Assembly: GCA_002269645.1 (NCBI GenBank) | Contig: NIVC01002163.1 | Span: 133,560-197,559 of the forward strand | Length of the DNA stretch: 64,000 nt | Reading direction: 5' to 3' | Source: Macrostomum lignano | Lineage: Eukaryota | The notes under the pieces: generated by a model | The model's database searches: none | What the model was told of the DNA's origin: nothing | The model's input: the letters and a program-made list of their open reading frames with translations, nothing else | Made by a program: the position numbers and the translations under genes | Shown here: in pieces, positions 2,055-51,040 of the stretch | Position numbering within the stretch: position 1 is the first letter of the stretch | How the letters are laid out: each line of letters opens with the position of its first letter

Positions 2055-2490
2055 ACGCTCATTTTGGCGTCGCAGGCACTCATTGTGGCGCTGTAGACAC
2101 TCATTTTGGCGCCGCAGGCACTCATTTTGGCGCTGCAGGCACTCATTTTGGCGTCGCAGGCACTCATTTTGGCGCCGCAAGCACTCATTTTGGCGCCGCA
2201 AGCACTCATTTTGGCGCCGCAAGCACTCGTTCTGGAGCCGCGGGCACTCATTTTGGCGCCGCAAGCACTCATTTTGGCGCTGCAGGCACTCATTTTGGTG
2301 CCGAAGACTCTAATTTGGCGCCGCAGGAACTCATTTTGGCGCCGCAAGCACTCATTTTGGCGCTGCAGGCACTTATTTTGGCGCCGCAAGCACTCATTTT
2401 GGCGCTGCAGGCACTTATTTTGGCGCCGCAAGCACTCATTTTGGCGCTGCAGGCACTCATTTTGGTGCCGAAGACTCACTTTGGTACCCT
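2055..2490. repeat. 21-bp minisatellite (GCACTCATTTTGGCGCCGCAG), about 20 copies
   Basis: Direct tandem units are visible and explain the heptad-repeat ORFs at 1961-2776 and on the opposite strand. Confidence 0.95.
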
Positions 2491-2620
2491 GAAGCAAAGT
2501 TATTTTTTTCCTCAACGGGTCACAAGATGGGATGGGGGACAAAGCATTGGCATGTCCCCCAAAGCATTTACGGGGGACATGTCCCCCCTCCGGTGGCGCG
2601 TGAAACGGTGCTCCTGCACA

Positions 2621-2730
2621 CACTTCAATCGTGACACACCTTGGCCGGCCAGGCTGCCGGATTTGAATCCAGTTGACTTTTTTCTGTGGGAGTTCATTCG
2701 TGACCGCGTCTTTGCGCAAGGAGACTTTTT
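2621..2730 (+). mobile_element. Tc1/mariner-superfamily transposase remnant (third catalytic-residue region)
   Basis: Translation WPARLPDLNPVDFFLWEFIRDRVF matches the WPARSPDLNPxDFFLW motif of Tc1/mariner transposases. A TA-CAGGGTG terminus-like sequence lies near 2895-2905. Confidence 0.7.
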
Positions 2731-4083
2731 TGGATTTACTTTGGCTGACCGCTGCTATTGTTGCGCTAGCATTTGACTAGATCTGGCGGCACCGCGGGTG
2801 GATGCTGTCCGCAATGCAGCTGCCGAATCCCTACATCCTGCTTTGGGACAAAAGTTTCGAGAAAGAAAACTTGCTGATGTTTACTGAGGAGCTGCTAAAT
2901 TACAGGGTGACAGGCAGAAGTGATAGCTAGCATGCGGTAAGCTAATTTGTGTTGCCCTTTTTTGAATCATCCATTAATTCGAGTGTTTTAGCTCTCAAAT
3001 AATGCCTTTTCAAACCTTTTCTCGACAGTTTCGCGAATGCATCTGGGGCAATGCCGCGGTTACATGCAATATTGCTTTATTTGGCATTCGGATGTCCAGA
3101 CGGTGAGGTTATTGCGAATCTAAGGCAGAAAAACTGAACACTTTCTATCTCCAGTGTACATGAATGATATTTTTGATACACCTCCTGGACAAGGATGCAG
3201 CTTATTTTCTTTAGATTCGGATTTTCCTAAGAGCTAAGAGCCATACAATGTGTAGGATGATAATAAAATCGTGACTTAATGTTTCCGTTAGCATGGAAAG
3301 CTCAGCAGAGGTTAAGTGCACACACGCTGACTTCCCTACAATAATTGCACCCCAACGACTGTGGCTGTGCATCATCACTAAAAATAAACAGCATTGCTCG
3401 AATCATTGACGCCTCAACGACTCAGCTTGGATGGTATGTCCCGTTCCCAATCTCAGATACACATGTACATGCAGTATGCGGGCCTCTGCACTGCATGGGA
3501 CGGATCCCTTTGGTAAGGAGGTCCTTAGTTGCTAGGCAAACGATTTTTCTAACCTTGTCTGCAATACACATACGGCTGAACATATTTAACAAAATTTGTA
3601 ATTTAAAAAATCGACCATAAAGAAGCAAACCGGAATTACGTTTTTAAATGCCTTGAATAAGACCACAGACTATATTTTAGTATATTTCGTGAATATTGTG
3701 CTGATGAAAAAAACAAAAAAGCATCTGCATGGGGGATTTAAAAAATTAGGACCAAAAACACGCAGCCCGGAATGGCGCCAAATGGATTGCTTGACAACAA
3801 AAAGTTCGTAATAAATTTGTCCGCAGTTTTGAAACAGTATGCTTGTAATTAATTTTCCTGGGGGAAAGGCCCATACTTTTTTAACTTTATATTTGTTAAT
3901 TAACTGAATACATTAGTACATTCTTGCAGCTTTCTAATCTGTTTAGTCGTAAATATGTTTGATTTAATCAAAACAATTATCTAGTAGCGCGAGCCGCAAC
4001 AGCAAAGTCAAGACGACAGAAAAAGTTTTGTTTGTCGATTGATACGGCTCAAGATCGAAGTTGTAACAGATTCCGGCTACGAA

Positions 4084-4586
4084 TCAGTAATTGCCCTTGC
4101 CCTTCGAGGCTGAGTGGCCGCGAGAATTGCGATTTCTATTGCGGGCCTGAAGGGAACTCATGTAGTCGGCTAGATAGTTAAAGAGCGGTAGATAGGAGCG
4201 CTTTGTAGCCAGAAGCTTTAGTTCGTCCGGAGAAGAGACGGCAGCTGAAATGTATTAGAAAAAAGTTCATTTAATTTGCAAGTAGAGCAGCGGCAACCGG
4301 CAACAGCAAAGTTTGAATTAAAAAAAATTTAATTAGCTATAATATATTGTACAGCGCGCACTACATTAAATGATATCTATATACACTGCATGAACAGGAA
4401 TTGATGGCAGACACAATTAAATTTACCCAGTCGCGACAGAACTAAGCTACCTTGATGATCAGATGGGCTAATAGCAGAAAAACGGTCACCAAGAGTCCCT
4501 GGAACAGCCATGGACAGAATTGGAAGAGTAGCGAAAGTTGAAAGTAGGAAAATTGCAGCAATGTTGGAAATTTTTTCGCTCCACAT
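4084..4586 (-). CDS. Small secreted peptide precursor, neuropeptide-like, 98 aa, two exons (4586-4451; 4244-4084)
   Basis: ATG at 4586-4584 followed by a hydrophobic signal-like segment (IAAIFLLSTFATLPILSMA). Donor CAAG|GTAGCT at 4450; acceptor CTTTTTCTAATACATTTCAG| at 4245. Phase-1 join gives an open frame: ...SDHQ-A-AVSSPDELKLLATKR-SYLPLFNYLADYMSSLQARNRNRNSRGHSASKGKGNY*. Confidence 0.6.
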
Positions 4587-6390
4587 GTTAGTTGCAAGTT
4601 TAGACGTGCCACAAAAACTATATATATATATAAAGGATTAGTTTTCAAAGCTGACTGAAAACGTTGGCTATCTAGCTAAAATTCGATTGATCGCGCTCGT
4701 CTTTTTATAGTTTTCTTTAACGGTTGTATAGCTAATTTTAATCTTTATAACAAAGTTAACGAAAAAAGTTTTAATTTATTAATTAAAAACCACTATAGAA
4801 CTGCTGTACTATAGCTTTTTATGTTCTTCAGTTTCAACTTCGTTGTGTCACAGTTATTTACTTAATTTAAATTTTATATTCTTTTTAGCACGTTTGAACT
4901 CACGCTTTGGTTGTTCATTTATCGTCAGGCCAAATTCATATAAATTGCATGCAAGCAAGGATAAATCTGCCTCCTATCAAAAGTAATAGCAATTTTTGTG
5001 CTGAAAAAATGAAAATTTCCTATCTCCGTAGTGTATTTTTTCGGGAAAAAGTGCCTTCAAAAATTTTCTAAGAAACGAGGTTTCCCGTCCTTCTACTTAA
5101 GTCGTCCTTGGGATAAATATTAATAACCGGTTCAATTAGGTATACTCTTTAGGCGCAAGCGCAGCACCAGATCCTGTTATTTTTGAAAACGGGACCGCAA
5201 TACTAACTTGCAGAATTGCAGTCCTTTTGATGCCACCAAAATTTTAATAGGGTGCCTGGTGCTATCCTAGGCTAGGGGCCTACCCATTAAGCCACCAAGT
5301 TGCAACTTGCAGGGCTATCTTCTAATATACGAGTATCTTGATCATATAATATAAATCATATAAAGCTAGTAGAGTGTATGCACTATTGGCCTGAGTGGTC
5401 TGGTTTATAACATTGTATTTTATCCTATGCTATATGTTATATATCATGGCTCTTTCTTATTGAGGTTTTCTGTTAGGCCTAGTCTAGGCATTAATAAGAT
5501 CAGAAAGTCATAGCTTATACTCTAGTAGATTCTACCCTATGGCAAGTTCTCAGATCCTAGGTTTATATATTTTACCCTTTAGTAAATATTTTGCCTTCTA
5601 GGCCTAATGTGATTTCCTAGATTTTATTTATACTAGGCCTAGTCTAGGTCACGTGAATAACTATGCCGCATGTTATTCTGCACGTAATTCCGCATGTTAT
5701 TCCATATGTTATTCCGCATGTTTTTCTGTACGTTATTCCGCACATTATTCCGCACATTATTCAGCAAATTATTCTGCACTTTTTTCACATGTTATTAGGC
5801 ATTTTTCCACGATGTTCTGTATAAAATTTACAAGTAATTTTTCCATTTGATACATTTTAAATGTAAAGCAAAAGCCTAATGTACATGAGCTTGTCGTTAT
5901 ATATTTTCCTAAATTATGCAGTACATGTACATGGCATTCTTAAAATTATAATTGACTGCAACAGAGTACTGTAGTTGCAGAGTTGTAAGTTGAGTTACAG
6001 AGTTGCATGCACAGAGCTGGCGTCGCTGAGAGGTAGAGAAAAGAAGATAAAAGTGACTACTTATCAACATATATCAAATTAATGAAAGAATCATATCATA
6101 CATGTACAAGGTCACTATAGGATGCAAAATAAAGTGTTCTTTGATACTGAAAGAAGTTTACACTTTAATAAATATTATAAGCTAACACCAAATAAAAAAC
6201 TAATGTGTAGTAAGTAAACCATATTACTGTATTTAGCTAATTTAGCTTTTTTTACAATTATATTTTATGCAGATTGTCATACTTATTAAAAACTATCTAT
6301 ATCCTCACGTTTTTGATGTGGAAATTATGTATGGAACGCGTAAGTTAGACTAGGGGCCTTTTCATATTACCAATTCCAGAACCAGAATCA

Positions 6391-7249
6391 AGCTTAAGAT
6401 CAACATTTATGGCGAAAACCAATGCATTTCAACCCACTAGGGCCGTCCTCAGGGTATATTTTATCACTGAACGAAACACTCAATATAAATAAGCAAACAA
6501 TTGTACTATCTCAAGTGTCAAATTGAAAACGGGAGGGTAACCAATGTACGAAAAACATAAAAAACTAGGGGTTGGAGTTAAGCGAAATAATGGGAGAGAG
6601 AGAGAGAGAAGGCAAACAGATGTAAAAAAAACAAAATGTACACGCAACAAAAAATAATCAAACTCAAAACACCCTAAGAAGGTAGCCCGCAATACTATGT
6701 AGCAACTGCACATTGAGACTGGGATTTTGAGCTTTGATGTGCAGCGCTTCAAGAATGCTAAGCTTGAATTCAGAGTTAGCACAGTCAATAATTTTAAACA
6801 ATTCAATCTGTTCTCTGTCACAGCAGCCCTTGCATTCCAGAAGGTGGTCCTGGATAGCAGATTTTTTCAGCCAATGCTCCCTAACTCTGGTGTGCAGGTG
6901 TCTTTTGGTTTTTCCCACATAAGAGATATTCTGATCTTCAGAACAACAAAATTTATAGACGACACCTGCAACTAGAGCACGAGGAACATGGGACTTGAGA
7001 TTGCTGACAAGTTTTGTTGCTGAGATTGCAACAAATCTCAATCTCAACAAGTTGCTGAGATTGCTGCTGAGATTGTCAGCAATCTCAAGTCCCGTGTTCC
7101 TCGTGCTCTAGTTGCAGGTGTCGTCTATAAATTTTGTTGTTCTGAAGATCAGAATATCTCTTATGTGGGAAAAAACCAAAAGACACCTGCCATAAATGTT
7201 GATCTTAAGCTTTATTTATTTGCTATTAATTAAGCGAGCAACTCTACCA
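6391..7249 (-). mobile_element. 5'-truncated Penelope-like retroelement fragment (GIY-YIG endonuclease C-terminus plus 3' region) with inverted partial copy
   Basis: ORF 7050-6664: GVVYKFCCSEDQNISYVGKTKRHLHTRVREH...LSILEALHIKAQNPSLNVQ is a typical PLE GIY-YIG domain. Inverted copy at 7073-7190. Flanked by the direct repeat CAGAACCAGAATCA at 6377-6390 and 7250-7263. Confidence 0.85.
6415..6461 (-). ncRNA. Candidate minimal type-I hammerhead ribozyme of the Penelope-like element
   Basis: Minus strand reads AAAATATACC-CTGAGGA-C-GGCCC-TAGT-GGGTT-GAAA-TGCA-TT-GGTTTT: CUGANGA core, stem II, GAAA, palindromic AUGCAU helix III, AUU cleavage triplet and ACC/GGU stem I. It lies ~200 nt downstream of the GIY-YIG stop. 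Confidence 0.65.
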
Positions 7250-7485
7250 CAGAACCAGAATCAGTTCGGAATTACAAGAAAAACAGCAATAACTATTAAA
7301 CTCTGTTAATATTTGACTGCCTATACAACCTCACTTAGCACAATTTTTCACTTTCTTCTTGGCAATTGTCATTTAATAATAAAAACTTTATAGCACGTAT
7401 CTCCCTCTAGTTATGGAGACTAAAAGTTATACTTCACAAATTGGTTCTGGTTCTAGAACCAGAACAAGCAATATGAAAAGGCCCT

Positions 7486-8228
7486 TGGTGGGAAATATGT
7501 TAAAAAAGAAGATGTGCGGACTATTGTGTGGAATAAAAATTGGGAATAGCGTGCGGAATAATATTCGGAATAATGTGCGGAATAATGTGTGGAATAAAAT
7601 GCGGAATAACATGCGGAATAAAATTCGAAATAGCGTGCGGAATAATATTCAGAATAATGTGCGGAATAGCGTGCAGAATAACGTGTGGAAAAACGTGTGG
7701 AATAATGTGTGGAATATTGTGCGGAACAACATGTGGACCATGTGGAATAACTAGCGGAACGTGCGGAATAACATGCATAATAACTTGTGGTGTATGTTAC
7801 ACTCATGTCTAGGTCATTATATAGGGCCTATACTAGTCTAGATATTATACTAGTCTAGATCATTATATATACTAGTCTAGATTTTTTACTAGTCTAGATC
7901 TAAAAAAAATTTGGGCATGCATTGGCTTTGCACTAGGGGTCCCAAATCCTAGACATTTTAATGAGTGTAACTATAACATACACTACACAGTCGATAGTAT
8001 GCATGTTATTCTGCACATTATTCTGCATGTTCCGCTAGTTATTCCAAATGTTCCGCATGTTGTTCCGCACAGTATTCCACACGTTATTCCACAAATTCTT
8101 CTGCACGCGTTATTCTGCACATTATTCCGCACATCCGCACATTATTCCGCATGCTATTCCAAATTTTATTCCGTACTATATTCCGCACATTAGTCTGCAC
8201 ATCTGCTTTTTTAACCTATTTCCTACCA
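7486..8228. repeat. Internal palindrome (arms ~7486-7812 and ~7948-8228) built from the same 12-bp module, nested in the right foldback arm
   Basis: TGGTGGGAAATATGTTAAAAAAGAAGATGTGCGGAC... at 7486 is the reverse complement of ...GTCTGCACATCTGCTTTTTTAACCTATTTCCTACCA ending at 8228. Inner ends GAGTGTAAC/GTTACACTC also mirror. Confidence 0.85.
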
Positions 8229-9574
8229 TTAAGCTAGCACTAGTCTAACTTACGCATCCAATACATGATTTCCACATAAAAAACGTGAAGATATAGATAG
8301 TTTTAATAAGTACGACAATCTGCATAAAATACAATTGTAAAAATAATGCCTCATAGCTAAATGCTTTTAGAGCATAATTAAAGCAGTAATATGGTTTACT
8401 TACTACATATTAGTTTTTTATTTGGTGTTAGGACTTATAATATTTATTAAAGTGTAAACTTCTTTCAGTATCAAAGAACACTTTATTTTGCATCTTGTAG
8501 TGACCTTGTACATGTATGATGTGATTCTTTTATTAATTAATATATGTTGATAAGTAGTCATTCTTCTCTTTCTCTAACCTCTCCATAACCCCGTCTCTGT
8601 GCATACAACTCAACTTACAACTCTGCAACTACAATATTACTCTGTTGCAGTCAATTATAATTTTACAAATGACATATACTTGTAATCCAGGAAAATATAA
8701 CAACAAGCTCATGTACATGTAGGCTTTTGCTTTACATTTAAAATGTATAAAAATGGAAAAATTGCTTGTAAATTTTATATAGAACATTGTGGAAAAAATG
8801 CCTGATAACATGCAAATAACATGCGGAATAACATGCAGAATAATGTGCAAAATAATGTATAGAAAAATGTGCAGAATAACGTATGGAATAACATGCAGAA
8901 TAATGTGTGGAATAACGTGTAGAATAGCATACGGCATAAGTTATTCACCTGACATTTTACAATCCCAGGATCCCAGACTAAAAATTGACCCAATCCTGGG
9001 ATTGAACAAACAAGTTTATAAGAAGCTTTCTATTATCCACAAAACAAATTTCTCAACCAATTTGAGCATCATTTGAGTTTCCAATTTCTTTTTCTAGCAT
9101 ATACTACATTGATAAAATAGTTAAAGGTATTTCATTTATCCTTGATCACTTATTCCTTGTAAAATTGTCACATTCTTTCTATGAATACAATATATTTTGA
9201 TCACAAATCATGCAATGCAATGCAACACAAATACTAGCAGCAGTTATAGAAATTTGCAATAGCACTGTTTCTGTGACATGGAAATTGGCAACTCTGACAG
9301 GTGATAGTAATCCCTATTGCAGCAAGTCTAAAAATGTATAGATGCCCTGCCAGGCATGCAGCCATGCAAGCTAAATTTTATTAAAGATGCACAGCTGCAT
9401 ATTGTATAGAAAAAAAGATTTTTCACATTTTTGCCCCCTGCATGTAAATAAAGAAATTTCAAATCAATTTTTATTGAGAGTTTATATTCACTTAAATTGA
9501 ACATTCCAAGTCTCGCTTTTCAGCTGCTGCTGGGCCTCTTGCTTCCTTTGTCAATTGCTGCCTTTAATTTTGTC

Positions 9575-9740
9575 AAAACCTGCTAGCTGAAGTTTGCTAG
9601 CCAAAACCTACTAGCTGAAGTTTGCTAGCCAAAACCTGGTAGCTGAAGTTTGCTAGCCAAAACATGCTAGCTGAAGTTTGCTAGCCAAAACATGCTAGCT
9701 GAAGTTGGCTAGCCAAAACCTGCTAGCTAAAGTTTATAAC
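9575..9740. repeat. 28-bp tandem repeat (AAAACCTGCTAGCTGAAGTTTGCTAGCC), ~6 copies
   Basis: Direct tandem units visible. Confidence 0.95.
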
Positions 9741-11464
9741 TAAAAAGCACTAGCATCAGTTTAAGTGCTTGGAATTAAAGTTAATTTGTCATTGTGGGTA
9801 CAGAATACTCTCAAGTCTCAATCAGATAGTAGGACAATAGTTTAAATTTCTTACTTAAACTTATTAAACTGTCATGGGCCTGGCTAAATGAATAGTACTC
9901 TAGCCTCTCCACGGGGGTGCAGAGAAAGCTATAAAAAGTTATTCCAAAACTACATTTGCTATAATGTATATTAAGCCCTATCGCCTGACCCTTTGTCTGG
10001 AGGAATGAGCTGGATAAAAGGCACAAACATCAGAAAAAGCAGGCAAACTTCACATGTTAAGAGACTATAGATTCTGTCCTGATTGAGTTACAATTACAAA
10101 GTTGAAACTTTATATTTAGACAAAAGACTGAGTCAATGAAGATGTGTTTTAAGTTTGAAGTCAATTGCTTTATGCAGATCAAACTTATGGCAGCAAAAGT
10201 TAATCAATTTTAAAACCCCTTTTACACACCTGGTCAGATAAGGGAAGGAGAGAGGCAGAGGTTAGAGTGCTTAATTTGTCTCTTTGACAAAAGTCAGACT
10301 AAATTTTAAGCAAAAAATGCTATCCTGGGGTTGATAAAAAAGGCTTGTTTCACACTCATTGCATTTGAGGTCAGCTTTATAACCTCCCTTTCTTTGATCA
10401 ATTGTCTATCAGACTGTTTGTTAAAAGATAAAATTCAATCAACACCACAAATTGTATGCCTGCCACGCATAAGGTCATAAAACTTGTAGGCTTTATTGTG
10501 AATATACATTTTTTTACACTGTACATTGGCCAAGGAAAGGCCTAAATGGTTGAACAATTAAATCATAAAATGGAGTGCCCATTGAAAGCCTTAAAAACAT
10601 GAAACATCGTATTTTAACATTTGAGCCACTTAAAATAAAGTTTCTAATTTAATTGAGTGGGCAATTTGGGAATCCATACTGTATCCATAGGCCATAGCAA
10701 AGAAATTTGTCCACAGACCCATAGAGTTTTCATTTTTATAGTTAGAAAAATATGCAGTTTCCCCATATAAGTTTCAACGCTGACTTGCCAGTATTGTAGG
10801 AGTTTACTTACAACATACATACATATGCACAAATAATATGTCAGTTTTAGTACATTCATATTAAGTGATATTGAGAGATTTGTATCACTGCTAATCAACA
10901 CAACAAAAGGATATTCAATAAAGCAATTAAGCGCAAATCTAATAGTCCTGATATAAGAACACTATGTTTCTCACCAAATTGGACAAGTAAAATTGTCTCT
11001 AGTAAATTACAACTTTGTGAGTTGGCCTAGAAAACTTTGGCTAGCAAACTGCAGCTCTATCTGCTCTAATGCAGCTCTATCTTGTATCTATCATGCGCCT
11101 ACACTGAAGTGGCATGGCACAGATCTTTTTTGTGCATGTATCATCATCATGTGCTACAACTGTGCAGCGCATGCAGGTCTATTTCATACATGTATTATGC
11201 ATTACCACTGCAGTGCGCAAAGCTCCATTTTGTATCACAGACAACACTTGTGATGCCCATACAATCTATAGGTGTGCATGCAAGTGCGCCAATAGATTTT
11301 CAAATTTTCACATGGATGCCATCTGTGCATACCCCTATTCGCTGCAATAGAGATAGTAATAAGTGATAGCTTAATTTAAAAAATTCTAAGCAAACACAAA
11401 TTGGGGTTGTTGCTTATACTATATGGCATTGGCACTATAGCAATCAGTAATGCTCTATTTTTTG

Positions 11465-11718
11465 TAGTTAGCAAAGTAGGCTCTTAGCAGGGCAAAATTG
11501 GAGAATATCATGTCACTTGGCTTGGACCTCACTTTTGTTAGGAGGATGCCTACAGTAGAAAAGGCGCATTCAGCTTCAACACTAATTGCTGGAATGGCCA
11601 TCAATGATTGGTACAGCAGCTGTAGCATCTCCTCTTGTTGCCCTATAGCCTGCAGGAATTCTAGCTCATGTCCAACCCTTGCCTCAATAGAATTTTCCCT
11701 CTTCTTGCTCTTAATCTG
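11465..11718 (-). mobile_element. hAT transposase C-terminal dimerisation-domain remnant
   Basis: Minus-strand translation LLYQSLMAIPAISVEAECAFSTVGILLTKVRSKPSD...LRAYF matches the hAT motif L.IP.TSV..ER.FS..G...TK.RS.L.D. No upstream transposase ORF is retained. Confidence 0.75.
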
Positions 11719-12155
11719 AGTGCCAGCCTGGGTCTATGAAATTTGCTTGTAAGAAGTTTGCTTGCAGAATTTGCATAGCCAGATTGTCTATGCAAATGGG
11801 CCTGGTTTTGAGCAATTGTAACTTTTTATTATATTATATTATAGTTATGCAAGAGTAATAACTAATATCTCATATCTTGGCAAATTTAGATTTTCCTATC
11901 TATCAAAACATATAGCAATTAAAGGGGTCCAAATGCAGATAAATAAAATATATTAATGTAACTTCTATGACATTAATAACTTTTAGAGACAGTCTTTATA
12001 AAATGCAACATAGTTTAGTTTAGCCTAATTTTATCGAAATTGAGGACCAACTATCTTGCACATTAAACAAAATGACCAAGGTAAAATATGTTGGACAATG
12101 TCTGTAAACCTCTTCTATTAACTGTAATTTTTGCAGCCAACTACCAGCAGCTGCA

Positions 12156-14257
12156 ATGGATCGGCAGGCCAAGATTGACAAGCTGAAGGCTCAGGTGGAC
12201 TCGATTCGCATTGGAGGCAAAGGATCCGCCCGCCGCAAGAAGAAGGTTATTCACAAGAACAATGCTACTGACGAGCGCAAGGTCACCACAACTTTAAAGA
12301 AGCTGGCAGTCAGCTCCATACCGGGCATCGAGGAGGTCAACATGTTCAAGGACAGCGGCGAAGTGATCCACTTCAACAATCCGAAAGTGCAGGCCTCGCT
12401 GCAGTCCAACACTTTCGCCATTAGTGGCCAGTCTGAGGTTAAGAATCTGACCGAGCTGCTGCCCAGCATCTGGAATCAGCTGGGCCCAGAGAACTTTGCT
12501 AACTTAAAGAAGCTGGCTACGAAATTTGGTGAGTGAACGATCCCGATCCTGAAGTGAATGACCCCGATCATGAAGGGAATGATCCCGATCCTGAAGTGAA
12601 TGATCCCGATCCTGAAGTGAATGACCCCGATCCTGAAGTGAATGATCCCGATCCTGAAGTGAATGATCCCGATCATGAAGTGAATGATCCCGATCTTGAA
12701 GTGAATGATCCCGATCCTGAAGTGAATGATCCCGATCATGAAGTGAATGATTCCGATTATGAAGTGATTGATCCCGATCATCAAGTGAATGATCCCGATC
12801 ATCAAGTGAATGGTCCCGATTATGAAGTGAACAATCCCGATTCTCAAGTGAATGGTCCCTAGCATAAAGTGAATAATCCCGATTCTGATGTGAATGGTCC
12901 CGATCATGAAGTGAATAATACCGATTCTTAAGTGAATGGTCCCGATAATGAAATGAATAATTCCGATTCTAAAGTGAATGATCCCGATCATGAAGTGAGT
13001 AATCCCGACTCTGAAGTGAATGGTCCCGATTATGAAGTGAACAATCCCGATTCTCAAGTGAATGGTCCCTAGCATAAAGTGAATAATCCCGATTCTGATG
13101 TGAATGGTCCCGATCATAAAGTGAATAATGCCGATTCTTAAGTGAATGGTCCCGATCATGAAGTGAATAATGCCGATTCTAAAGTGAATGGTCCCGATCA
13201 TGAAGTGAGTAATCCCGACTCTGAAGTGAGTAATCCCGACTCTGAAGTGAATGGTCCCGATACTGATGTGAATGGTCCCGAGCATAAAGTGAATAATCCA
13301 GACTCTGAAGTGAATGGTCCCGATACTGAAGTGAATAATCCTCCGATTCTCAGGTGAATGGTCCCGATACTGACGTGGATGATCCCGATACTGAAGGGAA
13401 TGATCCCGATACTGAAGGGAATGATCCCGATACTGAAGTGAATAATCCCCCGATTCTCAAGTGAATGGTCCCGATACTGAAGTGAATGATCCCGATACTG
13501 AAGTGAATGATCCCGATACTGAAGTGAATAATCCCCCGATTCTCAAGTGAATGGTCCCGATACTGAAGTGAATGATCCCGATACTGAAGTGAATGATCCC
13601 GATACTGAAGTGAATAATCCCCCGATTCTCAAGTGAATGGTCCCGATACTGAAGTGAATGATCCCGATACTGAAGTGAATGATCCCGATACTGAAGGGAA
13701 TGATCCCGATACTGAAGGGAATGATCCCGATACTGAAGTGAATGATCCCGATACTGAAGTGAATGATCCCGATTCTCAAGTGAATGGTCCCGATCATGAA
13801 GTGAGTAATCCCGACTCTGAAGTGAGTAATCCCGACTCTGAAGTGAATGGTCCCGATACTGAAGTGAATAATCCTCCGATTCTCAGGTGAATGGTCCCGA
13901 TACTGACGTGGATGATCCCGATACTGAAGGGAATTATCCCGATACTGAAGTGAATAATCCCCCGATTCTCAAGTGAATGGTCCCGATACTGAAGTGAATG
14001 ATCCCGATACTGAAGTGAATGATCCCGATACTGAAGGGAATGATCCCGATACTGAAGTGAATGATCCCGATACTGAAGGGAATGATCCCTTCAAACCCGT
14101 GAATGAAACCCGTGCTTCTGCAGGCTCTGGTGCTCCGAAAGCCGACGGTGAGGCCGGCGACGAATCGGCAGTCGGTGCTGGCCCGGCCGCCGCCGACGAG
14201 GACGATGTACCGGAGTTGGTTGGCAACTTTGACGGATCCTCAGCCAAGGCCGAATAA
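12156..14257 (+). CDS. BTF3: Nascent polypeptide-associated complex subunit beta / transcription factor BTF3, 168 aa (exons 12156-12528, 14124-14257)
   Basis: [14 protein letters not shown] and [34 protein letters not shown] domain. Donor G|GTGAGT at 12529, acceptor TTCTGCAG| at 14123, phase-consistent. Exon 2 supplies the conserved [13 protein letters not shown] tail. Confidence 0.95.
12533..14095. repeat. 21-bp minisatellite (GTGAATGATCCCGATCCTGAA) filling the BTF3 intron, ~70 units with higher-order blocks
   Basis: Tandem units run from the donor to ~30 nt before the acceptor. A 210-bp (10-unit) duplicated block is seen at ~12806 and ~13016. Confidence 0.95.
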
Positions 14258-17200
14258 GCAGCATTGAGTTGGTTTAAGCGCGACTTTTTTATACTACTTA
14301 AAACAGTTGACTTAAAATCGGTGCTCGCTACTGAGTTCACCTGTGTGGAAATGTTGGCCTTTGATTTGAAGCAGTGGTTTTCGATAAATAGCGTTGGACT
14401 TTATTGCCTGGCCGTTGTAATAAAAAATCTGAAAAGTTGGTATTAAAAAACGACTTTTGACATAACTTTACTGCGTTTTCCCTTGTTTCTTTACTTTACT
14501 TCTAGTACTGATAAAATTGTACATGTATAAAGGATTTTTAGAATACTAGAGAGCAAAGTAGTTATAAAGTTTTTGATGACTACATCAGCAGTAATTAAAC
14601 GTTTTTTGTATTGCATTTTAAACATGTATGTATCTTACAAACTTGGGAGGTTCACGCAATTCACGAGCGATTCCCATTGCCTTTAGGCACAGCATTTTTT
14701 GACCCAAAGAATACACATTTTGGCACTTTGCACAGATTAGTAAGGCACTTTGCTTTTGATTATTTATTCGGTTATGTATTACCCATAAAAATATCGAACT
14801 CAATGAGGGGCGCCATAAACCCGCTACTGTCTACTTTATGTAATAGTTTATGTAAGTATATATGCAAGAGAAATAAGAAAACCGACTTCAAAATAAGGTA
14901 AAATTGTACATGCCCAGTGCCGAAATACCTTTTAAATGGCACGGCTCGGCTCATTGGTTTTATAAATCCATTTTATCGTTCTTAGCTGACTGTAACAATA
15001 TGTATAATATAGATGATAAAATAGATTCATTAAACCAATGTGTCGAGCTGTGCCATAAATATTTATGATTTTTAGGTACAGGGCTATAAGAAAAGCAAAA
15101 CAAACCAAGAGGTAAGTCCGCCTCCTACATGTATATCAATTAAAGGTAGTAACAATTTTTGTGTTAAGAAATCAAAACCTATCCGCGTTGTGTACTTTTC
15201 TATGCTAGATCTTCATTTTTGCACTGTGTCAACCCTATGCATTTAAACGAAATGTACTGTGTATTAATGGTTGTTTGTTACTCAATTTAGCGGCTGCTGA
15301 AACTCGGAAAAAGGGATTGTATCTACCATGGTTGAATTGCCGGTTGTATTTGCAATAGAAGCTATGTAAAATACATTACAACTGCTTAATTTATCATACA
15401 TGGGTAGATTATGCCTAATGGAAGAAAAAATACATTCTAATTTGTTTTACATTTTTGCTATTGATTTGCATTGACGAATTCTTATTTGAAAATGTTACAC
15501 TTGCAGCTTAATGTCGATCCAACGACTCTTAAGTTAATTTATTTTGACTTACGAAAATTGCAGAAACAACTGTGTGATTATTACGTGTTATTCTGAAATG
15601 CATTGGAAGCCTGCTATTTATTTAAAGGCATGATATTCAGTTGATATTCATTTCTAATATGCTAATTGCCAACATGTTTTTGCCAAATATATCTGATAGG
15701 CCTTGTAATAGCCAGGATAGAATATTCGCATGGCAATTGTGAAACAAAAATTTGTGCACAAATTATTATGCACGTTTTTATTTTATAACTTTCTTTTAAT
15801 GCCATAGCCCCCCTCCTAGTCTAGATCTATAGTCAAGATCATAGCAAACCCCTACTAGAACAAATGCTATTAAAAAAGTTTGATTGCACCATGCGCTAGA
15901 ACAAATCCTATCAAAAAAGTTTGCTTACACTGTGTGCTAGAAAAAAAGTTTGCTCATGCCGTATAGGCCCTAATGCAACTTTTTGAATAAAAATGCAAAA
16001 AGCAATAATTTTCTATTTTAAAAAATAGGCCTCAAAACTATAATATAAAACTTAATTTGAATCTGTTTTATAAAAGGCAGTTGTTATTTGTCCGGTGACC
16101 AGACAAAAAGTGATATGGTTATTTGTCCAGTTACTGGATAATGGCTATGCTTTCTCATTCATCTAGTTAATATCAGACGAATAGGCTTTTTATTATTTAA
16201 ACAATTATTGAATTAAATTGATAATGCTTTTATAGAAGGCAGTTGTTATTCTTATGGTGAGTTGGTGACCATATAAATAACAAAATGGTTATTTTTATGG
16301 TTAACTCAAAAGACACTATGCAGGCCTATGGTCTTTACTTAATGTAACCTTTTAAATAGCAAAACTTTTTTTTATGGTCACCATAGGTAAGAAGCAAAAT
16401 GGCTATTTTTATGGTCATGTAGAAAAAATTTCTATTAAATTACAAGGTAATAGTTAACAATTACCTAAGGTCACCCATGTTGTGGTAAGCTACCATGACA
16501 AAAACCATTAGAAGTTATCATCATTTTTATTATTTATTATTTTATAATAAAATGTTTTTTTATTTTTTAAATTTAACTATCATAGTATTTGCACAGTGTT
16601 AGCAAGTTTGTCACTTCATTTAGATGGTATTTGTTTTAAGTGTTAAATGTAAAAATAACGGTCTTGCTATTTATACAGTCACCGTAACAGTAACAACTGC
16701 CTTTATAGAAACTACAAGGATGAATATTCTTAGACTTCAAAGACTTCTTACTCCTATCTTGATTATTATGTTGTTATGCTAGTGTACATCTTATATACCA
16801 AATTATGCCAAATTGAATACACTGCTTTCTTATATGTACACTAGTATACAACAAAATATTAATCAGTATACATGAAAAGTTCTAAAAAAATATAGAATAT
16901 TTATCACAAAACAAATAGCAATTTAAACAGTTAGCAATTTAACTCTTTATATACAATTTAAGTCTTTACAACAATGCAATATAATGTAAAAAAATTAAAA
17001 AGCCTTTAATATACAATAAAAAAAATTACATGCTTATTGAAGTTATTTTAGTCTTATTGAAAGTTTTGCTTTTAAGTGCAATAACTTTGTTTTACTAAAA
17101 CAAATGCATTATTCAATATTTTCAAATAAAATCATGCAAGTTTTTTAACAAATCAAAGTTTTGCACTTAAACTTTTTAAAATTGCATAAGTTTGCCAGAA

Positions 17201-19838
17201 ATATATATAAAAATGCACAATTTTGCTAGAAATGTGTTCAAAAATGCATTAAGTTTTGTCAATGCACACAGAATATGTCCAGGATTTAATATAAAAATTC
17301 AATCTTGGTTTGATAGCATCTTGAAAATAGACATTATTTCCAGGGCAAAATTTTTATATAAAATCCTAAATGCATTTTGTGTGATAACAAAAATTTGTGC
17401 AAAAGTTATTCATATGATTCTAATAAACTTGCGCAATCATAAAATTTGTATAGGTTTTATATAACTACAAAAATTGTTATTTCATTAAAAATCTTGCATA
17501 TTATACTTGTTATATTTAAAACAAAGTTTAAGCATTAAAGAAAAAATCATAAAATTTATTTTTAATTTTAGTTAGATAAGGTTCATTTTTAGTATAAATA
17601 TTTATTATTATATTTTATTGTAAAAAACTTAAAAGTTACAAACAAAATTCAAATGTAAAAGACTTGCTCAAAAAGTTTTATGCAATATGTAACTTTCATT
17701 CAAAATTTCCATGCAAATATTCTATCTTGGCATTAGTTTCAATTTAGCAAATATATATTAGGCCTATTATGCTTTTTTATAATTTTTAATTGCATTAAAA
17801 ACATAGGCCTATAAAACTGCTAATATTGATCTTTCTCATTTTTGTTCCTTTTATATATTCTATATATCTTGGTCAAAGCAGGATAATATAGATTGTAGTT
17901 GCTTAACATTAGCACAGAGAAAATTACTCAAGCAATAACCCTATCTCATGCAACCTATACATTGCCTTGCATTTTGTTAACTAATTTGCTTGCTTGCTTG
18001 ACTATAAAATATATTGTCTTGAATAATTTGCAATATAAAGAGAATTTTAAGATTATAAGTCTCATATTCATAATAAGGCCTTTGGAGGCCAGTGTGTTAA
18101 AAAGTCTTTCTGGCATATAAGCAGAAGATAATAAGAAAAAACCTATTATATCTAGTTTCTAAACTATTAGAGTCATATTAGACATACTAGAAATTAAATG
18201 TTTTAATAGTTTGTACATAAAAAAAATCAAAAAATTGTTAGAGATACTACTTAAGCATTTTGAATAAGAAAAATTTTCTATCAAAGAAATGAGATATCTA
18301 TAAAGGCATATACATAGTTTTAAATAGCAAGTATTACAATATACAACATTAGCAAAAAACTTATGTTAGTATTATATAGCAATAAATAAAAGCTTGGGAA
18401 AGAAGACACAAGGAAAATTTTAAGCACTAGGATTAGTACTTATTGTTAGTTTTTGTTTTTTATTAAGCTGGCATGTTATGTGATATATCTTTGAGGCTTT
18501 GTGGAGCTAAGACACACAAAGAAAACAAAAACTATGATTCTATTCTAAGCCACTGACTGCCTGCACTTATATTTGTAGCTAAGTTGAAAGCTAAAGCAAT
18601 GGTGGACTAATGCAAGAGTAAGATAGGAAATAAAAAATAAGCACTGATCAATTTGAAGTCTTAGATGAGCTTGTACATATATTAAAAACATACATTAAAT
18701 CGCTTTTTTGCCACACTCCCCCACCTGGGATGAAGTGATATCACTGGCATAGAGGAAAAGTTGAACAGCATGATATTTGCCTCAAAGCCAATAATTGAAT
18801 TATTTGGTAGTTATGCATTTCTAGGATTTTTATATTCTTGGTTATTGTGCAAAATGGGTTTTAGCTCTTGCTTTGAGATCAGTGATTATTAGATTATGCA
18901 GTTGGTTTTTAAACAAGATTTTTAAATATACAAATACAAAAAACTAGTATAAAAAGGCCTTCCACAAATATATATAGCCCAATTGGAAAAATAATTGTCT
19001 TAGCAATGACATTCTACATATATGTATAAATCAATCAGTATATTTGTTATTTTTATATCTAATATTGAAATATGTTTATAATCTTCAAATTAAGAATTCT
19101 TTAAATTTAAATTACATAAAAGCCTATTAACACTAAAAGAACAACATTAGACTGAATAAAGTAAAGTAAGATATGAAAATACTCTTGTTCCTATTTAATT
19201 TAGCACTTGGATCAAAGTTTTTTTATACATTTGTTCACTTGGTAAGAATGTTCTATCTATTTTATTTAGTCAAATGATTTGTTTTGGTATTAAGCTTCTT
19301 TTTAGGCTGAAATAAAAAAACAGAGCAATTGTACACCAACAATGCCAAGCCTGAAATAAGAGGGTTTAAAAATTTAACACTACTTGCTCAGCAGTGCAGC
19401 TAGAATAAAATGCCCCCACCAATGGAGGGGTGGGCTCCCACCTAACCAAAACAAGACAGAGTGTACACATGCAGCAGGGGGTGCACAGAATAGCATGCTT
19501 GGGCACTAAAGCCATCACATTTTTGCTTGGAAATCTGTAAAAAACATTAATTGAAACATACATCAATTAATGCATAATTGATCAATTCAAGAAGTCTCGA
19601 CATGAGAATCAAGCAATGGTAGAATGAAATGATACCTCAAATTAAAGTACATGGAACTGGAACTTAATAGCATCTAGCTTGAAAAAACTGGGTGTCAAAA
19701 AGTAAATTAGTCAATGACACACTATGCCACAAAAAACCTATGACGCTACACATTAAACCTTATCTTGCCGCAAATGCAACAACCTTATGATGTCTAAAAA
19801 TATGTTTTTTTCAATCTGCTTTCCAGCTAAGCGGCAAC

Positions 19839-20315: not shown

Positions 20316-21031
20316 AGGCTATAATATACTGTTTTCAAATTCAAATTTGGTTTTTATTGGCTATTTGTTGCGAAGCTAGCTAATTATAATGCATTTTTGC
20401 GCTTAAAAAACCGGACTTACATAACATAAAACATTTTTCTAAGTGACTTGAAAGAACTAGGCGCGAGTTTGATCAGTGAATTGCCGATTTACTTACTATT
20501 TATGCTTATTGTACCGTTTTGTTCACCTGTTGCTTTGTAATTATCTAAGTAAAACTATCATTCTTTTCTCACTCCAGTTTGCCACTATATTTGACTTCTT
20601 TATTTCAGTTTTCAATAGTTTTTTAGAAGGCTAGCTTGAATTTAGTGAATTGAGTTTGTATTTTGGAAAGTAGGCAGTAGGACAGGGTGGCTTAGCAGTT
20701 AACTCCCGACTCGCCCCAGAGGCCCGTTGAAAACGTTACCTTGACAAGAATCGCTGAAGAGTCAAGTTGCAAACAACTCGTTAAGTTACGCAGATGCGCT
20801 TTAGACGCAGCTCAATGATTCTGCAGCGTCTTTGGAGTCGTTTTAGAGTCGTCTAGAGTCACTTTTTGTCTATTTTACCTGTGTCGCTTGCAACAAATCT
20901 GTGGGCGACTCAAGTACCTCTGGGACGCTTTTTGGCCTAGCGATCGCTTTCATCGGGAAGCAGCCAGGTTTGCAAAATCTTAGAGTAAATTTTGGAGAAG
21001 CTCGATATTATCTCATTGATGCCGTGTGAAG

Positions 21032-21984
21032 ATGCCCACAGATAAAAAGGCGGCGGTTAAGAAGCCTGTCAAGAAGGGAGACTCGGCCACCAAGGCCAAG
21101 CGAGTGCCAGCCGTGCCCGAAACTGCGCTGAAGGGCAAAAAGGCCGCCATCGAAGCGCGGGCCAAGCGGCTTAGACTGAGCGTCCTGCGCCGTCGTAAGG
21201 AGCGCCAGAAGCGCATGGCGGTGTTTAAGAAGGCGGAGAAATACCAGCTGCAGTACGAGAGCATGGCTAAGTCGGAGCTGCAGAAGGCCAGGCAGGCCAA
21301 GAAGCACAGCAATTTCTACGTGCCAGCCGAAGCCAAGGTGGCCTTCGTTGTGCGAATCCGCGGTATTAACGGTCTGCACCCGAAGCCGCGCAAGATATTA
21401 CAGTTATTCCGGATGCGCCAGATCAACAACGGCGTGTTTTTGAAGCTCAACAAAGCTACTGTAAGTAGTATTTTTAGTCTAGATTTTTATTGAAGCGCCA
21501 GATTTGTTATTTGAGACGCTAATATATTTGACTGATTTGATTTATAATTGACCTGTTCTACTATAAGTAGCCTTGTAAATAGAATAGGAAAAATAAATTT
21601 CTATTCTTGACATGCCATTGCCAGATCAACATGCTGCGCATCATCGAGCCCTACATCATGTGGGGCTACCCGGACCTCAAGTCTGTCCGGTCCCTGCTCT
21701 ACAAGCGCGGCTTTGGGCGCGTCAACGGCCAGCGAGTTCCCCTGACTGACAACAAGATCGTTGAGAAGGCGCTCGGCCGCAAGGGTGTGACGTGTATCGA
21801 GGACATGATCCACCAGATTTACACCTGCGGCCCCCGATTCAAGGCCGTCACCAACTTCCTGTGGGCCTTCAAGCTCAAGACGCCGCGCGGCGGTTTCCGC
21901 AAGAAGGCGAACCACTTCGTGGAGGGCGGCGACTTCGGCAACCGGGAGTTCTACATTAACCGCATGCTGCGACGCATGGTCTGA
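21032..21984 (+). CDS. RPL7: 60S ribosomal protein L7 (uL30), 262 aa (exons 21032-21460, 21625-21984)
   Basis: [29 protein letters not shown]|[22 protein letters not shown] motifs. Donor ACT|GTAAGT and acceptor CCAG|ATC, phase 0. Confidence 0.97.
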
Positions 21985-40509: not shown

Positions 40510-42230
40510 GGGGGGAGGGGAGATGAGAGGCAGAGGGGAAGAGAGGAGACAGGCAGAGATGAGAGAGGCAGAGAGAGGAGATGAGAAAGGCAAAGAGGGG
40601 AGATGAGAGAGTTAGAGAGGGGAAATGAGAGAGGCAGAGTGGAAATATGAGAGATGAGAGAGGGGAGATGAGAGGCAGAGAGGGGATATGAGAGATGAGA
40701 GAGGCAGAGGCAGAGAGGAGATATGAGAGATGAGAGAGGCAGAGGCAGAGAGGGGATATGAGAGATGAGAGAGGCAGAGAGGCAGAGAGGGGGGAGATGA
40801 GAGGCAGAGAGGGGAGATGAGAGAGGCAGAGAGGGGAGATGAGAGAGGCAGAGAGGGGAGATGAGAGGCAGAGAAAAGAGATGAGAGGCAGAGAGGGGAG
40901 ATCTGAGAGGCAGAGAGGGGAGATGAGAGAGGCAGAGAGGGGAGATGAGAGGCAGAGAGGGGAGATGGGAGGCAGAGAGGGGAGATAAGAGAGGCAGAGA
41001 GGGGAGATGAGAGGCAGAGAGGGGAGATGAGAGAGGCAGAGAGGGGAGATGAGAGAGGCAGAGAGGGAAGATGAGAGAGGCAGAGAGGGGAGATGAGAGG
41101 CAGAGAGGGGAGATGGGAGGCAGAGAGGGGAGATAAGAGAGGCAGAGAGGGGAGATGAGAGGCAGAGAGGGGAGATGAGAGAGGCAGAGAGGGGAGATGA
41201 GAGAGGCAGAGAGGGGAGATGAGAGAGGCAGAGAGGGGAGATGAGAGAGGCAGAGAGGGGAGATGGGAGGCAGAGAGGGGAGATAAGAGAGGCAGAGAGG
41301 GGAGATGAGAGGCAGAGAGGGGAGATAAGAGAGGCAGAGAGGGGAGATAAGAGAGGCAGAGAGGGGAGATGAGAGGCAGAGAGGGGAGATGAGAGAGGCA
41401 GAGAGGGGAGATGAGAGAGGCAGAGAGGGGAGATGAGAGAGGCAGAGAGGGGAGATGAGAGGCAGAGAGGGGAGATGGGAGGCAGAGAGGGGAGATAAGA
41501 GAGGCAGAGAGGGGAGATGAGAGGCAGAGAGGGGAGATAAGAGAGGCAGAGAGGGGAGATGAGAGAGGCAGGGAGGGGAGATGAGAGAGGCAGAGAGGGG
41601 AGATGAGAGAGGCAGAGAGGGGAGATGAGAGAGGCAGAGAGGGGAGATGAGAGAGGCAGAGAGGGGAGATGAGAGAGGCAGAGAGGGGAGATGAGAGGCA
41701 GAGAGGGGAGATGGGAGGCAGAGAGGGGAGATAAGAGAGGCAGAGAGGGGAGATGAGAGGCAGAGAGGGGAGATAAGAGAGGCAGAGAGGGGAGATGAGA
41801 GAGGCAGGGAGGGGAGATGAGAGAGGCAGAGAGGGGAGATGAGAGAGGCAGAGAGGGGAGATGAGAGAGGCAGAGAGGGGAGATGAGAGAGGCAGAGAGG
41901 GGAGATGGGAGGCAGAGAGGGGAGATGAGAGGCAGAGAGGGGAGATGAGAGAGGCAGAGAGGGGAGATGAGAGAGGCAGAGAGGGGAGATGAGAGAGGCA
42001 GAGAGGGGAGATGAGAGAGGCAGAGAGGGGAGATGACAGAGGCAGAGAGGGGAGATGAGAGAGGCAGAGAGGGGAGATGGGAGGCAGAGAGGGGAGATGA
42101 GAGGCAGAGAGGGGAGATGAGAGAGGCAGAGAGGGGAGATGAGAGAGGCAGAGAGGGGAGATGAGAGAGGCAGAGAGGGGAGATGACAGAGGCAGAGAGG
42201 GGAGATGAGAGAGGCAGAGAGGGGATATGA
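40510..42230. repeat. Purine-rich 20-22-bp minisatellite (GGCAGAGAGGGGAGATGAGA[GA])
   Basis: Near-pure G/A strand over 1.7 kb; explains the Leu/Ser/Pro ORFs at 40436-42599. Confidence 0.95.
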
Positions 42231-50900: not shown

Positions 50901-51040
50901 TCAGAGGGCGATTCTCTTATGGGGTCAGAGGGCGACTCTCAGATGGGGTCAGAGGGCGATTCTCTTATGGGGTCAGAGGGCGACTCTCATGGGGTCAGAG
51001 GGAGACTCTCAGATGGGGTCAGAGGGCGACTCTCATATGG
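47990..51040. repeat. 24-bp minisatellite (ATGGGGTCAGAGGGCGACTCTCAG), ~125 units, 3 kb
   Basis: Highly homogeneous tandem array with a few single-base deletions; source of the 398-1024-aa repeat ORFs. Confidence 0.97.

What the first reader, a model, noticed from the sequence alone, without database searches (positions are those of the whole stretch)
4084..4586. Hidden two-exon neuropeptide-like precursor missed by the ORF track
Splicing 4586-4451 to 4244-4084 yields a 98-aa protein with an N-terminal hydrophobic signal-like segment, a dibasic KR site, then SYLPLFNYLADYMSSLQAR followed by a basic RNRNRNSRG...KGK tail with further possible processing sites. The Tyr/Leu spacing is loosely NPY/NPF-like but the RPRFG end is absent, so it may be an unclassified peptide. 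The ORF track shows only a read-through of exon 1. The donor (GTAGCT) is non-optimal.
Basis: partly seen in the sequence, partly recalled or inferred. Interest (0 to 1): 0.7.

Follow-up and report, generated by a model that had tools for sequence, protein, structure and literature searches.

The report
Unannotated small secreted-peptide gene, flatworm
The window comes from the flatworm Macrostomum lignano, and the flagged stretch is probably a real but unannotated two-exon gene for a 98-residue secreted pro-peptide with no known relatives; nothing yet shows it is a neuropeptide, and it is not NPY/NPF-like.

Summary
Joining 4586-4451 to 4244-4084 on the minus strand across a 206-nt GT..AG intron gives a 98-aa ORF. 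It has a hydrophobic N-terminus, one KR site (K60R61) and a cationic C-terminal peptide.

The window is the last 64 kb of Macrostomum lignano contig NIVC01002163.1. Two further syntenic copies of the locus exist in the same assembly. Against the ~95% identical copy, all 6 differences within the gene body fall in the intron and none in the 297 coding bases (P≈0.005). One intron change creates a stop codon in the read-through frame. The real neighbouring gene BTF3 shows 4 changes in 504 coding bases.

This supports a constrained, spliced coding gene. I put that at about 0.75. There is no transcript evidence, and there is no homologue in 5.8 billion or 1.84 billion proteins or in the metagenome contigs. 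The gene's absence from GenBank fits the ORF-based filter used for that annotation.

The neuropeptide function is untested. Each NPY/NPF feature that the sequence alone can show was checked and is absent. An antimicrobial or gland-secretion role fits the architecture equally well. The finding is a modest annotation gap, not a surprise.

The parts
4619..4632 (-). (TA)7 run, a possible TATA element, 33-46 nt upstream of the ATG
   Evidence: Read directly from the sequence. It is 4 nt shorter in the paralogous copy L004. Its function is inferred only.
4451..4586 (-). Exon 1: ATG, hydrophobic signal-like segment (residues 6-27), start of the propeptide; ends in phase 1 at AAG|GTAGCT
   Evidence: Zero differences to L004 and L002. 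AlphaFold2 predicts a helix at residues 3-27.
4427..4450 (-). Optional exon extension if the alternative donor TGG|GTAAAT (GT at 4426-4425) is used; adds GSLVLSRL and gives a 106-aa isoform
   Evidence: Same phase as the proposed donor. It is also inside the difference-free run 4404-4608, so conservation cannot choose between the two donors.
4245..4450 (-). Intron, 206 nt, 34% G+C, GT..AG, with CTAAT and a T-run before the acceptor
   Evidence: It carries all 6 differences (5 substitutions and 1 indel) found between window and L004 inside the gene body. The C>T change at 4403 makes a TAA in the read-through frame in L004.
4084..4244 (-). Exon 2: rest of the propeptide, K60R61 (4203-4198), 37-aa C-terminal peptide S62-Y98 (4197-4087), TGA stop (4086-4084)
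   Evidence: 52% G+C against 34% in the intron. Zero differences to L004 and L002. AlphaFold2 predicts a helix at residues 63-87, pLDDT 75-84.
3963..3968 (-). ATTAAA, the only poly(A)-signal hexamer in the 480 nt after the stop; implies a 3' UTR of about 120-140 nt
   Evidence: Conserved in L004. Use as a poly(A) signal is inferred.

Best explanation
This is an unannotated, lineage-restricted, two-exon protein-coding gene of Macrostomum lignano, at NIVC01002163.1 positions 137643-138145, minus strand. It encodes a 98-aa pre-pro-peptide, or 106 aa if the alternative donor is used. The proposed steps are all inferred. The hydrophobic N-terminus directs the protein into the secretory pathway and is cut off, most plausibly after Ala27 (S-M-A|V-P). 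A mildly acidic spacer (V28-T59) follows. It is removed by a PC2-type convertase at the single K60R61 site. That releases a 37-aa strongly basic C-terminal peptide (net charge +5, or +6 when R61 is counted, as). Its first 18 residues, SYLPLFNYLADYMSSLQA, form a moderately amphipathic helix. Further cutting at RNSR (residues 84-87) is possible. The peptide then acts outside the cell. Whether it is a neuronal signal, a gland secretion or a defence peptide cannot be decided from sequence. What is shown: the ORF and splice arithmetic, the absence of annotation, the absence of homologues, and the exon-specific conservation between paralogous copies.
For: (1) The ORF and splice geometry are correct. 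The only two donor-like GTs in exon 1 are both in the phase that the single good acceptor needs.
(2) The exons are richer in G+C (43% and 52%) than the intron (34%) and the 5' flank (27%).
(3) Three syntenic copies exist in assembly Mlig_3_7. Window versus L004 differs at 55 places in 1674 nt. Inside the 503-nt gene body, all 6 differences lie in the intron and none in the 297 nt of CDS (binomial P=0.0047). An exon-intron-exon template slid along the alignment is difference-free only at the true position, 16 of 1172 placements.
(4) The first difference past exon 1 creates a stop in the read-through frame in L004, as expected for an intron.
(5) The real neighbour BTF3 shows 4 differences in 504 coding nt in the same comparison, so the candidate behaves like a coding exon.
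(6) Absence from GenBank has an explanation. That annotation kept only transcripts with a TransDecoder ORF and dropped 'non-coding' ones (PMC5730564). The small proteins annotated in the fetched loci (73 and 91 aa) all have Pfam hits.
(7) M. lignano has a PC2 homologue expressed in the nervous system (PMC4490696).
(8) AlphaFold2 predicts helices at 3-27 and 63-87, and the hydrophobic moment is 0.43-0.49 over residues 60-78.
Against: There is no transcript, junction-read or peptide evidence, and none can be obtained here. No homologue was found anywhere. Only one informative sequence comparison exists, at about 3% divergence, so dN/dS is 0/0. Difference-free runs of 160-319 nt also occur in apparently non-coding DNA of the same alignment (10008-10326, 3444-3603), and divergence is patchy, so gene conversion is possible. 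Zero synonymous changes is itself slightly fewer than expected for a real gene (about 2.4 differences at the BTF3 rate, P about 0.09). The donor GTAGCT lacks the usual +4A and +5G. Codon usage is neutral overall, +15 bits for exon 2 and -16 bits for exon 1. The signal-like N-terminus is not rare among random ORFs of this AT-rich DNA (13% by a crude rule). Its uncharged stretch of 27 residues could instead be a membrane anchor.
Confidence: 0.55

Rival explanations
1. The gene is real and it is specifically a neuropeptide or peptide-hormone precursor. It would be made in neurons or neurosecretory cells, cut by PC2 at KR, and the C-terminal peptide would act on a receptor.
For: The signal-like start, small size, KR site and cysteine-free helical peptide fit. 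Non-amidated bioactive peptides are documented in flatworms, for example YHFFRL and YLTGGIRY (PMC2953531). M. lignano has a neural PC2 homologue.
Against: There is only one dibasic site, whereas the flatworm prohormone screen required several. There are no repeated peptide copies and no Gly-basic amidation signal at a plausible peptide end (only G94-K95). No similarity to any known neuropeptide was found. No expression data exist. The same layout fits non-neural secreted peptides.
Confidence: 0.2
2. The gene is real, but the product is a defence or gland-secretion peptide. Possibilities are an antimicrobial-type peptide or a fast-evolving secretion such as a seminal-fluid or adhesive-gland component. 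It would be built like classic antimicrobial precursors: signal, anionic propiece, KR, cationic amphipathic peptide.
For: The computed charges fit: propiece net -2 (pI 4.7), C-terminal peptide +6 counting R61 (pI 10.6) with an amphipathic helical head. Orphan status and absence from a related macrostomid transcriptome in the database fit a fast-evolving secreted protein. The comparison with frog-skin antimicrobial precursors is from general knowledge and was not tested.
Against: The hydrophobic moment is only moderate. The basic residues sit in a polar tail rather than along the helix face. There are no expression or activity data.
Confidence: 0.25
3. This is not a gene. A chance 69-codon ATG ORF in AT-rich DNA happens to lie upstream of a chance open frame, and the two difference-free blocks are ordinary patchiness of divergence or non-coding conserved elements.
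For: No transcript evidence, no homologue, and no annotation. Comparable identical runs occur in non-coding DNA. Codon usage is neutral. Signal-like starts are common in random ORFs. The donor is weak.
Against: The two longest identical runs of the local 1.7-kb alignment coincide with the two proposed exons and break inside the proposed intron. The G+C steps coincide with the exon boundaries. Both plausible donors are in the right phase. An ATTAAA lies at a suitable distance.
Confidence: 0.22
4. It is a divergent member of the NPY/NPF family.
For: Only that the C-terminal peptide is 37 residues long, contains several Tyr and Leu, and ends in Tyr.
Against: There is no RxR[FY]-Gly-basic end, and Tyr98 is followed directly by the stop with no amidation donor. 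The intron lies in codon 46, 15 codons before the KR, not in the Arg codon before the terminal aromatic residue as in flatworm and vertebrate npy genes (PMC2953531). No NPY-family protein was retrieved by phmmer.
Confidence: 0.02

Closest known systems
Planarian 'secreted peptide prohormone' (spp) and npp genes (Collins et al. 2010, PMC2953531)
   Same: They are small flatworm-specific precursors with a signal sequence and basic cleavage sites. Many lack homologues outside flatworms, some give non-amidated peptides, and they were often missed by gene prediction.
   Different: Those genes were chosen for multiple dibasic sites and were validated by mass spectrometry and in situ hybridisation. 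This candidate has one KR, no repeats and no validation. No sequence similarity to any protein was found, and six 4-residue fragments of the peptide gave no sequence match in the main text of that paper.
NPY/NPF family
   Same: The peptide length is about 37 aa, it is rich in aromatic residues and Leu, and it ends in Tyr.
   Different: It lacks the RxRF/Y-amide end, the amidation Gly, the conserved intron position and any detectable sequence similarity. It is not a member.
Signal / anionic propiece / KR / cationic peptide precursors of antimicrobial peptides (for example amphibian skin peptides; from general knowledge)
   Same: The order of parts and the charge pattern are the same.
   Different: No homology; the cationic residues are in a disordered tail; no activity data.
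Unannotated small-ORF genes dropped by ORF-length or homology filters
   Same: It is a 98-aa orphan ORF in an annotation restricted to transcripts with a TransDecoder ORF. TransDecoder's default minimum of 100 aa is from my own knowledge.
   Different: Whether a transcript exists in the unfiltered Mlig_RNA_3_7_DV1.v1.genes set could not be checked here.

Membership tests
Protein-coding gene (spliced) | Open frame across canonical GT..AG splice sites in a compatible phase | tested here: met
   136 + 161 nt give 98 codons plus a stop. The junction is AAG|GTAGCT ... TTTCAG|C. The alternative donor TGG|GTAAAT has the same phase.
Protein-coding gene (spliced) | Exons more constrained than the intron and flanks between diverged copies | tested here: met
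   0 of 297 exon positions differ, against 6 of 206 intron positions and 3.3% over the 1.7-kb alignment (P=0.0047). A stop is created in the read-through frame. One comparison only.
Protein-coding gene (spliced) | A spliced, polyadenylated transcript exists | not testable with these tools
   No exact product is in the 15-billion-protein collection. That collection appears to lack M. lignano RNA-seq assemblies, because the RpL7 and BTF3 clusters have no Logan member at about 100% identity.
Protein-coding gene (spliced) | Coding-type codon usage | tested here: inconclusive
   Log-odds +0.7 bits overall (exon 1 -15.6, exon 2 +15.1). It ranks 37th of 98 random ORFs. The training set was only 1288 codons.
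Neuropeptide / peptide-hormone precursor (criteria used for flatworms, PMC2953531) | N-terminal signal sequence | tested here: inconclusive
   It passes a simple n/h/c-region and -3/-1 rule, and AlphaFold2 gives a helix at 3-27. The rule also passes 13% of random ORFs, and SignalP was not available.
Neuropeptide / peptide-hormone precursor (criteria used for flatworms, PMC2953531) | Multiple dibasic cleavage sites | tested here: not met
   There is a single KR (60-61) and one RxxR (84-87).
Neuropeptide / peptide-hormone precursor (criteria used for flatworms, PMC2953531) | Expression in neurons or neurosecretory cells and PC2-dependent mature peptides | not testable with these tools
   This needs in situ hybridisation or single-cell data and peptidomics.
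NPY/NPF family | C-terminal RxR[FY] followed by Gly (amidation) and a basic cleavage site | tested here: not met
   The C-terminus is ...SKGKGNY followed by the stop. There is no RF or RY and no Gly after the last residue.
NPY/NPF family | Intron separating the RXR motif from the final amidated residue (PMC2953531) | tested here: not met
   The only intron is in codon 46, in the propeptide spacer.
NPY/NPF family | Detectable sequence similarity to family members | tested here: not met
   No hit at E<=10 in the word-indexed search, and none at E<=0.001 by phmmer against 1.84 billion representatives.
Antimicrobial-type precursor (signal / anionic propiece / KR / cationic peptide) | Order of parts and charge pattern | tested here: met
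   Propiece net -2, pI 4.7. C-terminal peptide +6 counting R61, pI 10.6.
Antimicrobial-type precursor (signal / anionic propiece / KR / cationic peptide) | Membrane-active amphipathic mature peptide with antimicrobial activity | not testable with these tools
   Only a moderate hydrophobic moment (0.43-0.49) and a predicted helix at 63-87. No assay was possible.

The most novel reading that the evidence does not exclude
A Macrostomum-specific, non-amidated signalling peptide (SYLPLFNYLADYMSSLQA or the 37-aa C-terminal peptide) from a gene that every annotation has missed. That would make it a new flatworm neuropeptide or hormone family with no relatives elsewhere.
Probability: 0.2. Interest if true: 0.45.

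Novelty: new member of a known kind. Interest (0 to 1): 0.3.

Why it matters
If real, this adds one orphan secreted peptide to the gene set of a regeneration and reproduction model flatworm. It also shows that the GenBank annotation, which was filtered on predicted ORFs, can miss short secreted precursors of the kind neuropeptide and seminal-fluid studies look for. It does not change any general picture. Lineage-restricted small secreted peptides are common, and planarian work had already shown that they escape gene prediction.

Tried and rejected
- Homology searches with the 98-aa product found nothing: word-indexed search of 5.8 billion proteins, full phmmer on 1.84 billion representatives, exact look-up of the 98-aa, 106-aa and 69-aa products, an exact 29-mer of exon 2 in metagenome contigs, and a back-translated search of the same collection.
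- Literature searches for the peptide string and for 4-mers of it in the planarian prohormone paper found nothing. McVeigh et al. 2009 is not held.
- Rfam and tRNA scans of the window were empty.
- There is no paralogue inside the window and none near the second BTF3 paralogue group, which lies in a different gene neighbourhood.
- The codon-usage log-odds test was uninformative.
- The bacterial promoter/terminator scan is irrelevant for a eukaryote.
- A 27-nt similarity between the intron and the 3' UTR (ACTTTGCTGTTGC...) is barely above shuffled controls (score 27 against a maximum of 26) and was not pursued.
- My first guess of an insect genome, from poly-Q/poly-A coding and G+C content, was wrong. 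RpL7 is 97% identical to M. lignano.
- Reconstructing BTF3 with one GT-AG intron starting from the ATG failed because the GenBank product starts upstream of the ATG.

Full report
**1. The observation**

On the minus strand, 4586-4451 (136 nt, starting with ATG) and 4244-4084 (161 nt, ending with TGA) add up to 297 nt. The intervening 206 nt begin AAG|GTAGCT and end TTTTTTCTAATACATTTCAG|C. The mechanical ORF list contains only the 69-aa read-through of exon 1, at 4377..4586.

The KR is at residues 60-61. The peptide after it, S62-Y98, has 37 residues. There are no cysteines, one RxxR (RNSR, 84-87) and one Gly-basic pair (G94-K95).

Of the 13 GT dinucleotides inside the exon-1 ORF, only two have a donor-like context: AAG|GTAGCT (exon end 4451) and TGG|GTAAAT (exon end 4427). 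Both are in phase 1, the phase required by the only acceptor with a pyrimidine tract. The second donor would insert GSLVLSRL and give 106 aa.

**2. Where the window comes from**

An RpL7 exon at 21026-21493 is 97% identical to a Macrostomum lignano protein. The contig encoding that protein is 100% identical to window 11029-31745. The coordinates show that the window is the last 64,000 bp of NIVC01002163.1 (assembly Mlig_3_7, GCA_002269645.1). Record position equals window position plus 133,559.

The window is full of minisatellites, as published for this genome (PMC5730564).

**3. Annotation status**

GenBank has no gene call anywhere in window 2138-12137. The nearest calls are BTF3/NAC (12138-14257), an LSM gene and RpL7. 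The 98-aa, 106-aa and 69-aa products are not in the 15-billion-protein collection.

This absence is weak evidence. The GenBank annotation is the 'coregenes' subset, from which transcripts without a TransDecoder ORF and those overlapping repeats were removed (PMC5730564). The small proteins annotated in the fetched loci (73 and 91 aa) all have Pfam domains. An orphan 98-aa ORF would probably have been dropped, since TransDecoder's default minimum is 100 aa (my own knowledge).

The collection also seems to hold no M. lignano RNA-seq assemblies. The RpL7 and BTF3 clusters contain no Logan member at about 100% identity. The only Logan members are from relatives with 85-86% identical BTF3, the closest from runs SRR28338164-6.

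**4. Homologues**

None were found. The searches were:
- the word-indexed search of 5.8 billion proteins, with no hit at E<=10;
- full phmmer against 1.84 billion representatives, with no hit at E<=0.001;
- metagenome contigs by an exact exon-2 29-mer and by back-translated patterns;
- the literature, by peptide string.

The protein is an orphan as far as these resources can see.

**5. Independent test with paralogous copies**

M. lignano DV1 is a hidden polyploid with about 180 Mb of blocks that are at least 95% identical. Through the BTF3 neighbour I retrieved two more syntenic copies. They are L002 (NIVC01003316.1) and L004 (NIVC01000016.1).

L002 is identical over window 3700-4900 and so uninformative here. 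L004 aligns to window 3293-4966 with 46 substitutions and 9 indels, which is 3.3%.

- Inside the 503-nt gene body, all 6 differences are in the 206-nt intron and none in the 297 coding bases (binomial P=0.0047).
- The two longest identical runs of this alignment, 4404-4608 and 4079-4254, each contain one proposed exon.
- A 161/206/136 template slid along the alignment is free of differences in both 'exon' parts only at the true position, 16 of 1172 placements.
- The first difference beyond exon 1 (C>T at 4403) turns CAA into TAA in the read-through frame of L004. The read-through ORF is therefore not protected, as expected of an intron.

As a yardstick, the real BTF3 coding sequence shows 4 differences in 504 nt (3 synonymous, 1 not) in the same comparison.

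There are caveats. This is one comparison at low divergence, so dN/dS is undefined. Divergence is patchy, 1-6% between blocks. Identical runs of 160-319 nt also occur where no gene is evident (10008-10326, 3444-3603). Gene conversion between copies cannot be excluded.

**6. Other intrinsic features**

- G+C steps up in the exons: 43% and 52%, against 34% in the intron and 27% in the 5' flank.
- A (TA)7 run lies 33-46 nt before the ATG.
- The only AATAAA/ATTAAA hexamer in the 480 nt after the stop is ATTAAA at 3968-3963, and it is conserved in L004.
- Codon usage is neutral overall.
- The signal-like N-terminus passes a crude rule, but so do 15 of 114 random ATG ORFs in this AT-rich DNA.
- AlphaFold2 without an alignment gives helices at 3-27, 32-37, 51-60 and 63-87, with mean pLDDT 61 and 75-84 over residues 61-80.

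**7. What it most likely is and does**

Putting the evidence together, I rate a real spliced coding gene at about 0.75. The product has the layout of a secreted pre-pro-peptide. Its parts are:
- a hydrophobic leader, with a likely cut after Ala27 by the -3/-1 rule (inferred);
- a mildly acidic spacer (net -2, pI 4.7);
- a single KR;
- a basic C-terminal peptide (pI 10.6) whose first 18 residues form a moderately amphipathic helix.

M. lignano has a PC2 homologue expressed in the nervous system whose knock-down is lethal in hatchlings (PMC4490696), so the processing machinery exists. All processing steps are inferred.

The sequence does not tell whether the peptide is a neuronal signal, a defence peptide or a gland secretion. 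My conditional split is roughly 0.3 / 0.35 / 0.35, the last share also including a membrane-anchored micro-protein.

**8. Comparison with known families**

For NPY/NPF, each feature that the sequence alone can show fails: the RxRF/Y-Gly end, the conserved intron position (PMC2953531) and sequence similarity. Receptor activation could not be tested.

Of the criteria used for planarian prohormones (signal sequence plus multiple dibasic sites), the second is not met.

In kind, the closest analogues are the lineage-specific planarian spp/npp precursors and, by architecture, antimicrobial-type precursors. Neither is related by sequence.

**9. Verdict**

The gene model is plausible and has some independent support. 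The neuropeptide label is an untested guess, and the NPY/NPF hint is wrong. This is an annotation gap of a familiar kind, worth a look at existing RNA-seq data but not surprising. Interest is 0.3.

Noticed in passing
window 21029-21745 (+), compare L002 18156-19100: The GenBank RpL7 product for this copy (P0001, 183 aa, 'partial') runs out of frame after exon 1. The genome itself encodes an intact second exon in another frame ([18 protein letters not shown]...RRMV*). A 5-nt indel at 21608-21612 relative to L002 sits near the acceptor. This is probably a mis-called splice site rather than a pseudogene.
   Followed up: partly
window 12532-14089 (BTF3/NAC intron): The single intron of BTF3 is almost entirely a 21-nt minisatellite of about 74 copies. 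The gene span differs among the three copies (2120, 3502 and 1713 nt), so the array length varies between paralogues.
   Followed up: partly
window 6664-7050 (-), within 5628-7793: A 128-aa ORF (…YVGKTKRHLHTRVREH…) looks from memory like the GIY-YIG endonuclease end of a Penelope-like retroelement. The surrounding segment is absent from copy L004 and so is a candidate insertion. There was no PDB hit, so the identification is unverified.
   Followed up: partly
window 2215-9689 versus 9574-17224, compared with L002: Copy L002 is 99% identical to the window on the left part (100% over 3700-4900) but only about 95% on the right part. This mosaic suggests recombination or gene conversion between copies, or a chimeric assembly of haplotypes.
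   Followed up: no
window 10008-10326 and 3444-3603: These are difference-free runs of 319 and 160 nt between the window and the roughly 95% identical copy L004, in DNA with no annotated gene and no convincing ORF. They may be conserved non-coding elements or just rate patchiness.
   Followed up: no
window 4300-4312 and 3996-4008 (minus strand): The intron and the 3' UTR share ACTTTGCTGTTGC plus loose similarity, each followed about 40 nt later by ATTAAA. The alignment score is barely above shuffles (27 against a maximum of 26). It is possibly a relic of a small internal duplication.
   Followed up: partly
window 55038-57590 (-): An 850-aa uninterrupted ORF encodes a C2H2 zinc-finger protein with poly-Q and poly-A tracts. 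The exact ORF product is not in the protein collection.
   Followed up: no
window 26863-28335, 40515-42230, 47982-51051 and others: There are very long, high-identity minisatellite arrays with periods of 15-39 nt and up to 128 copies. They generate long artefactual ORFs on both strands.
   Followed up: no
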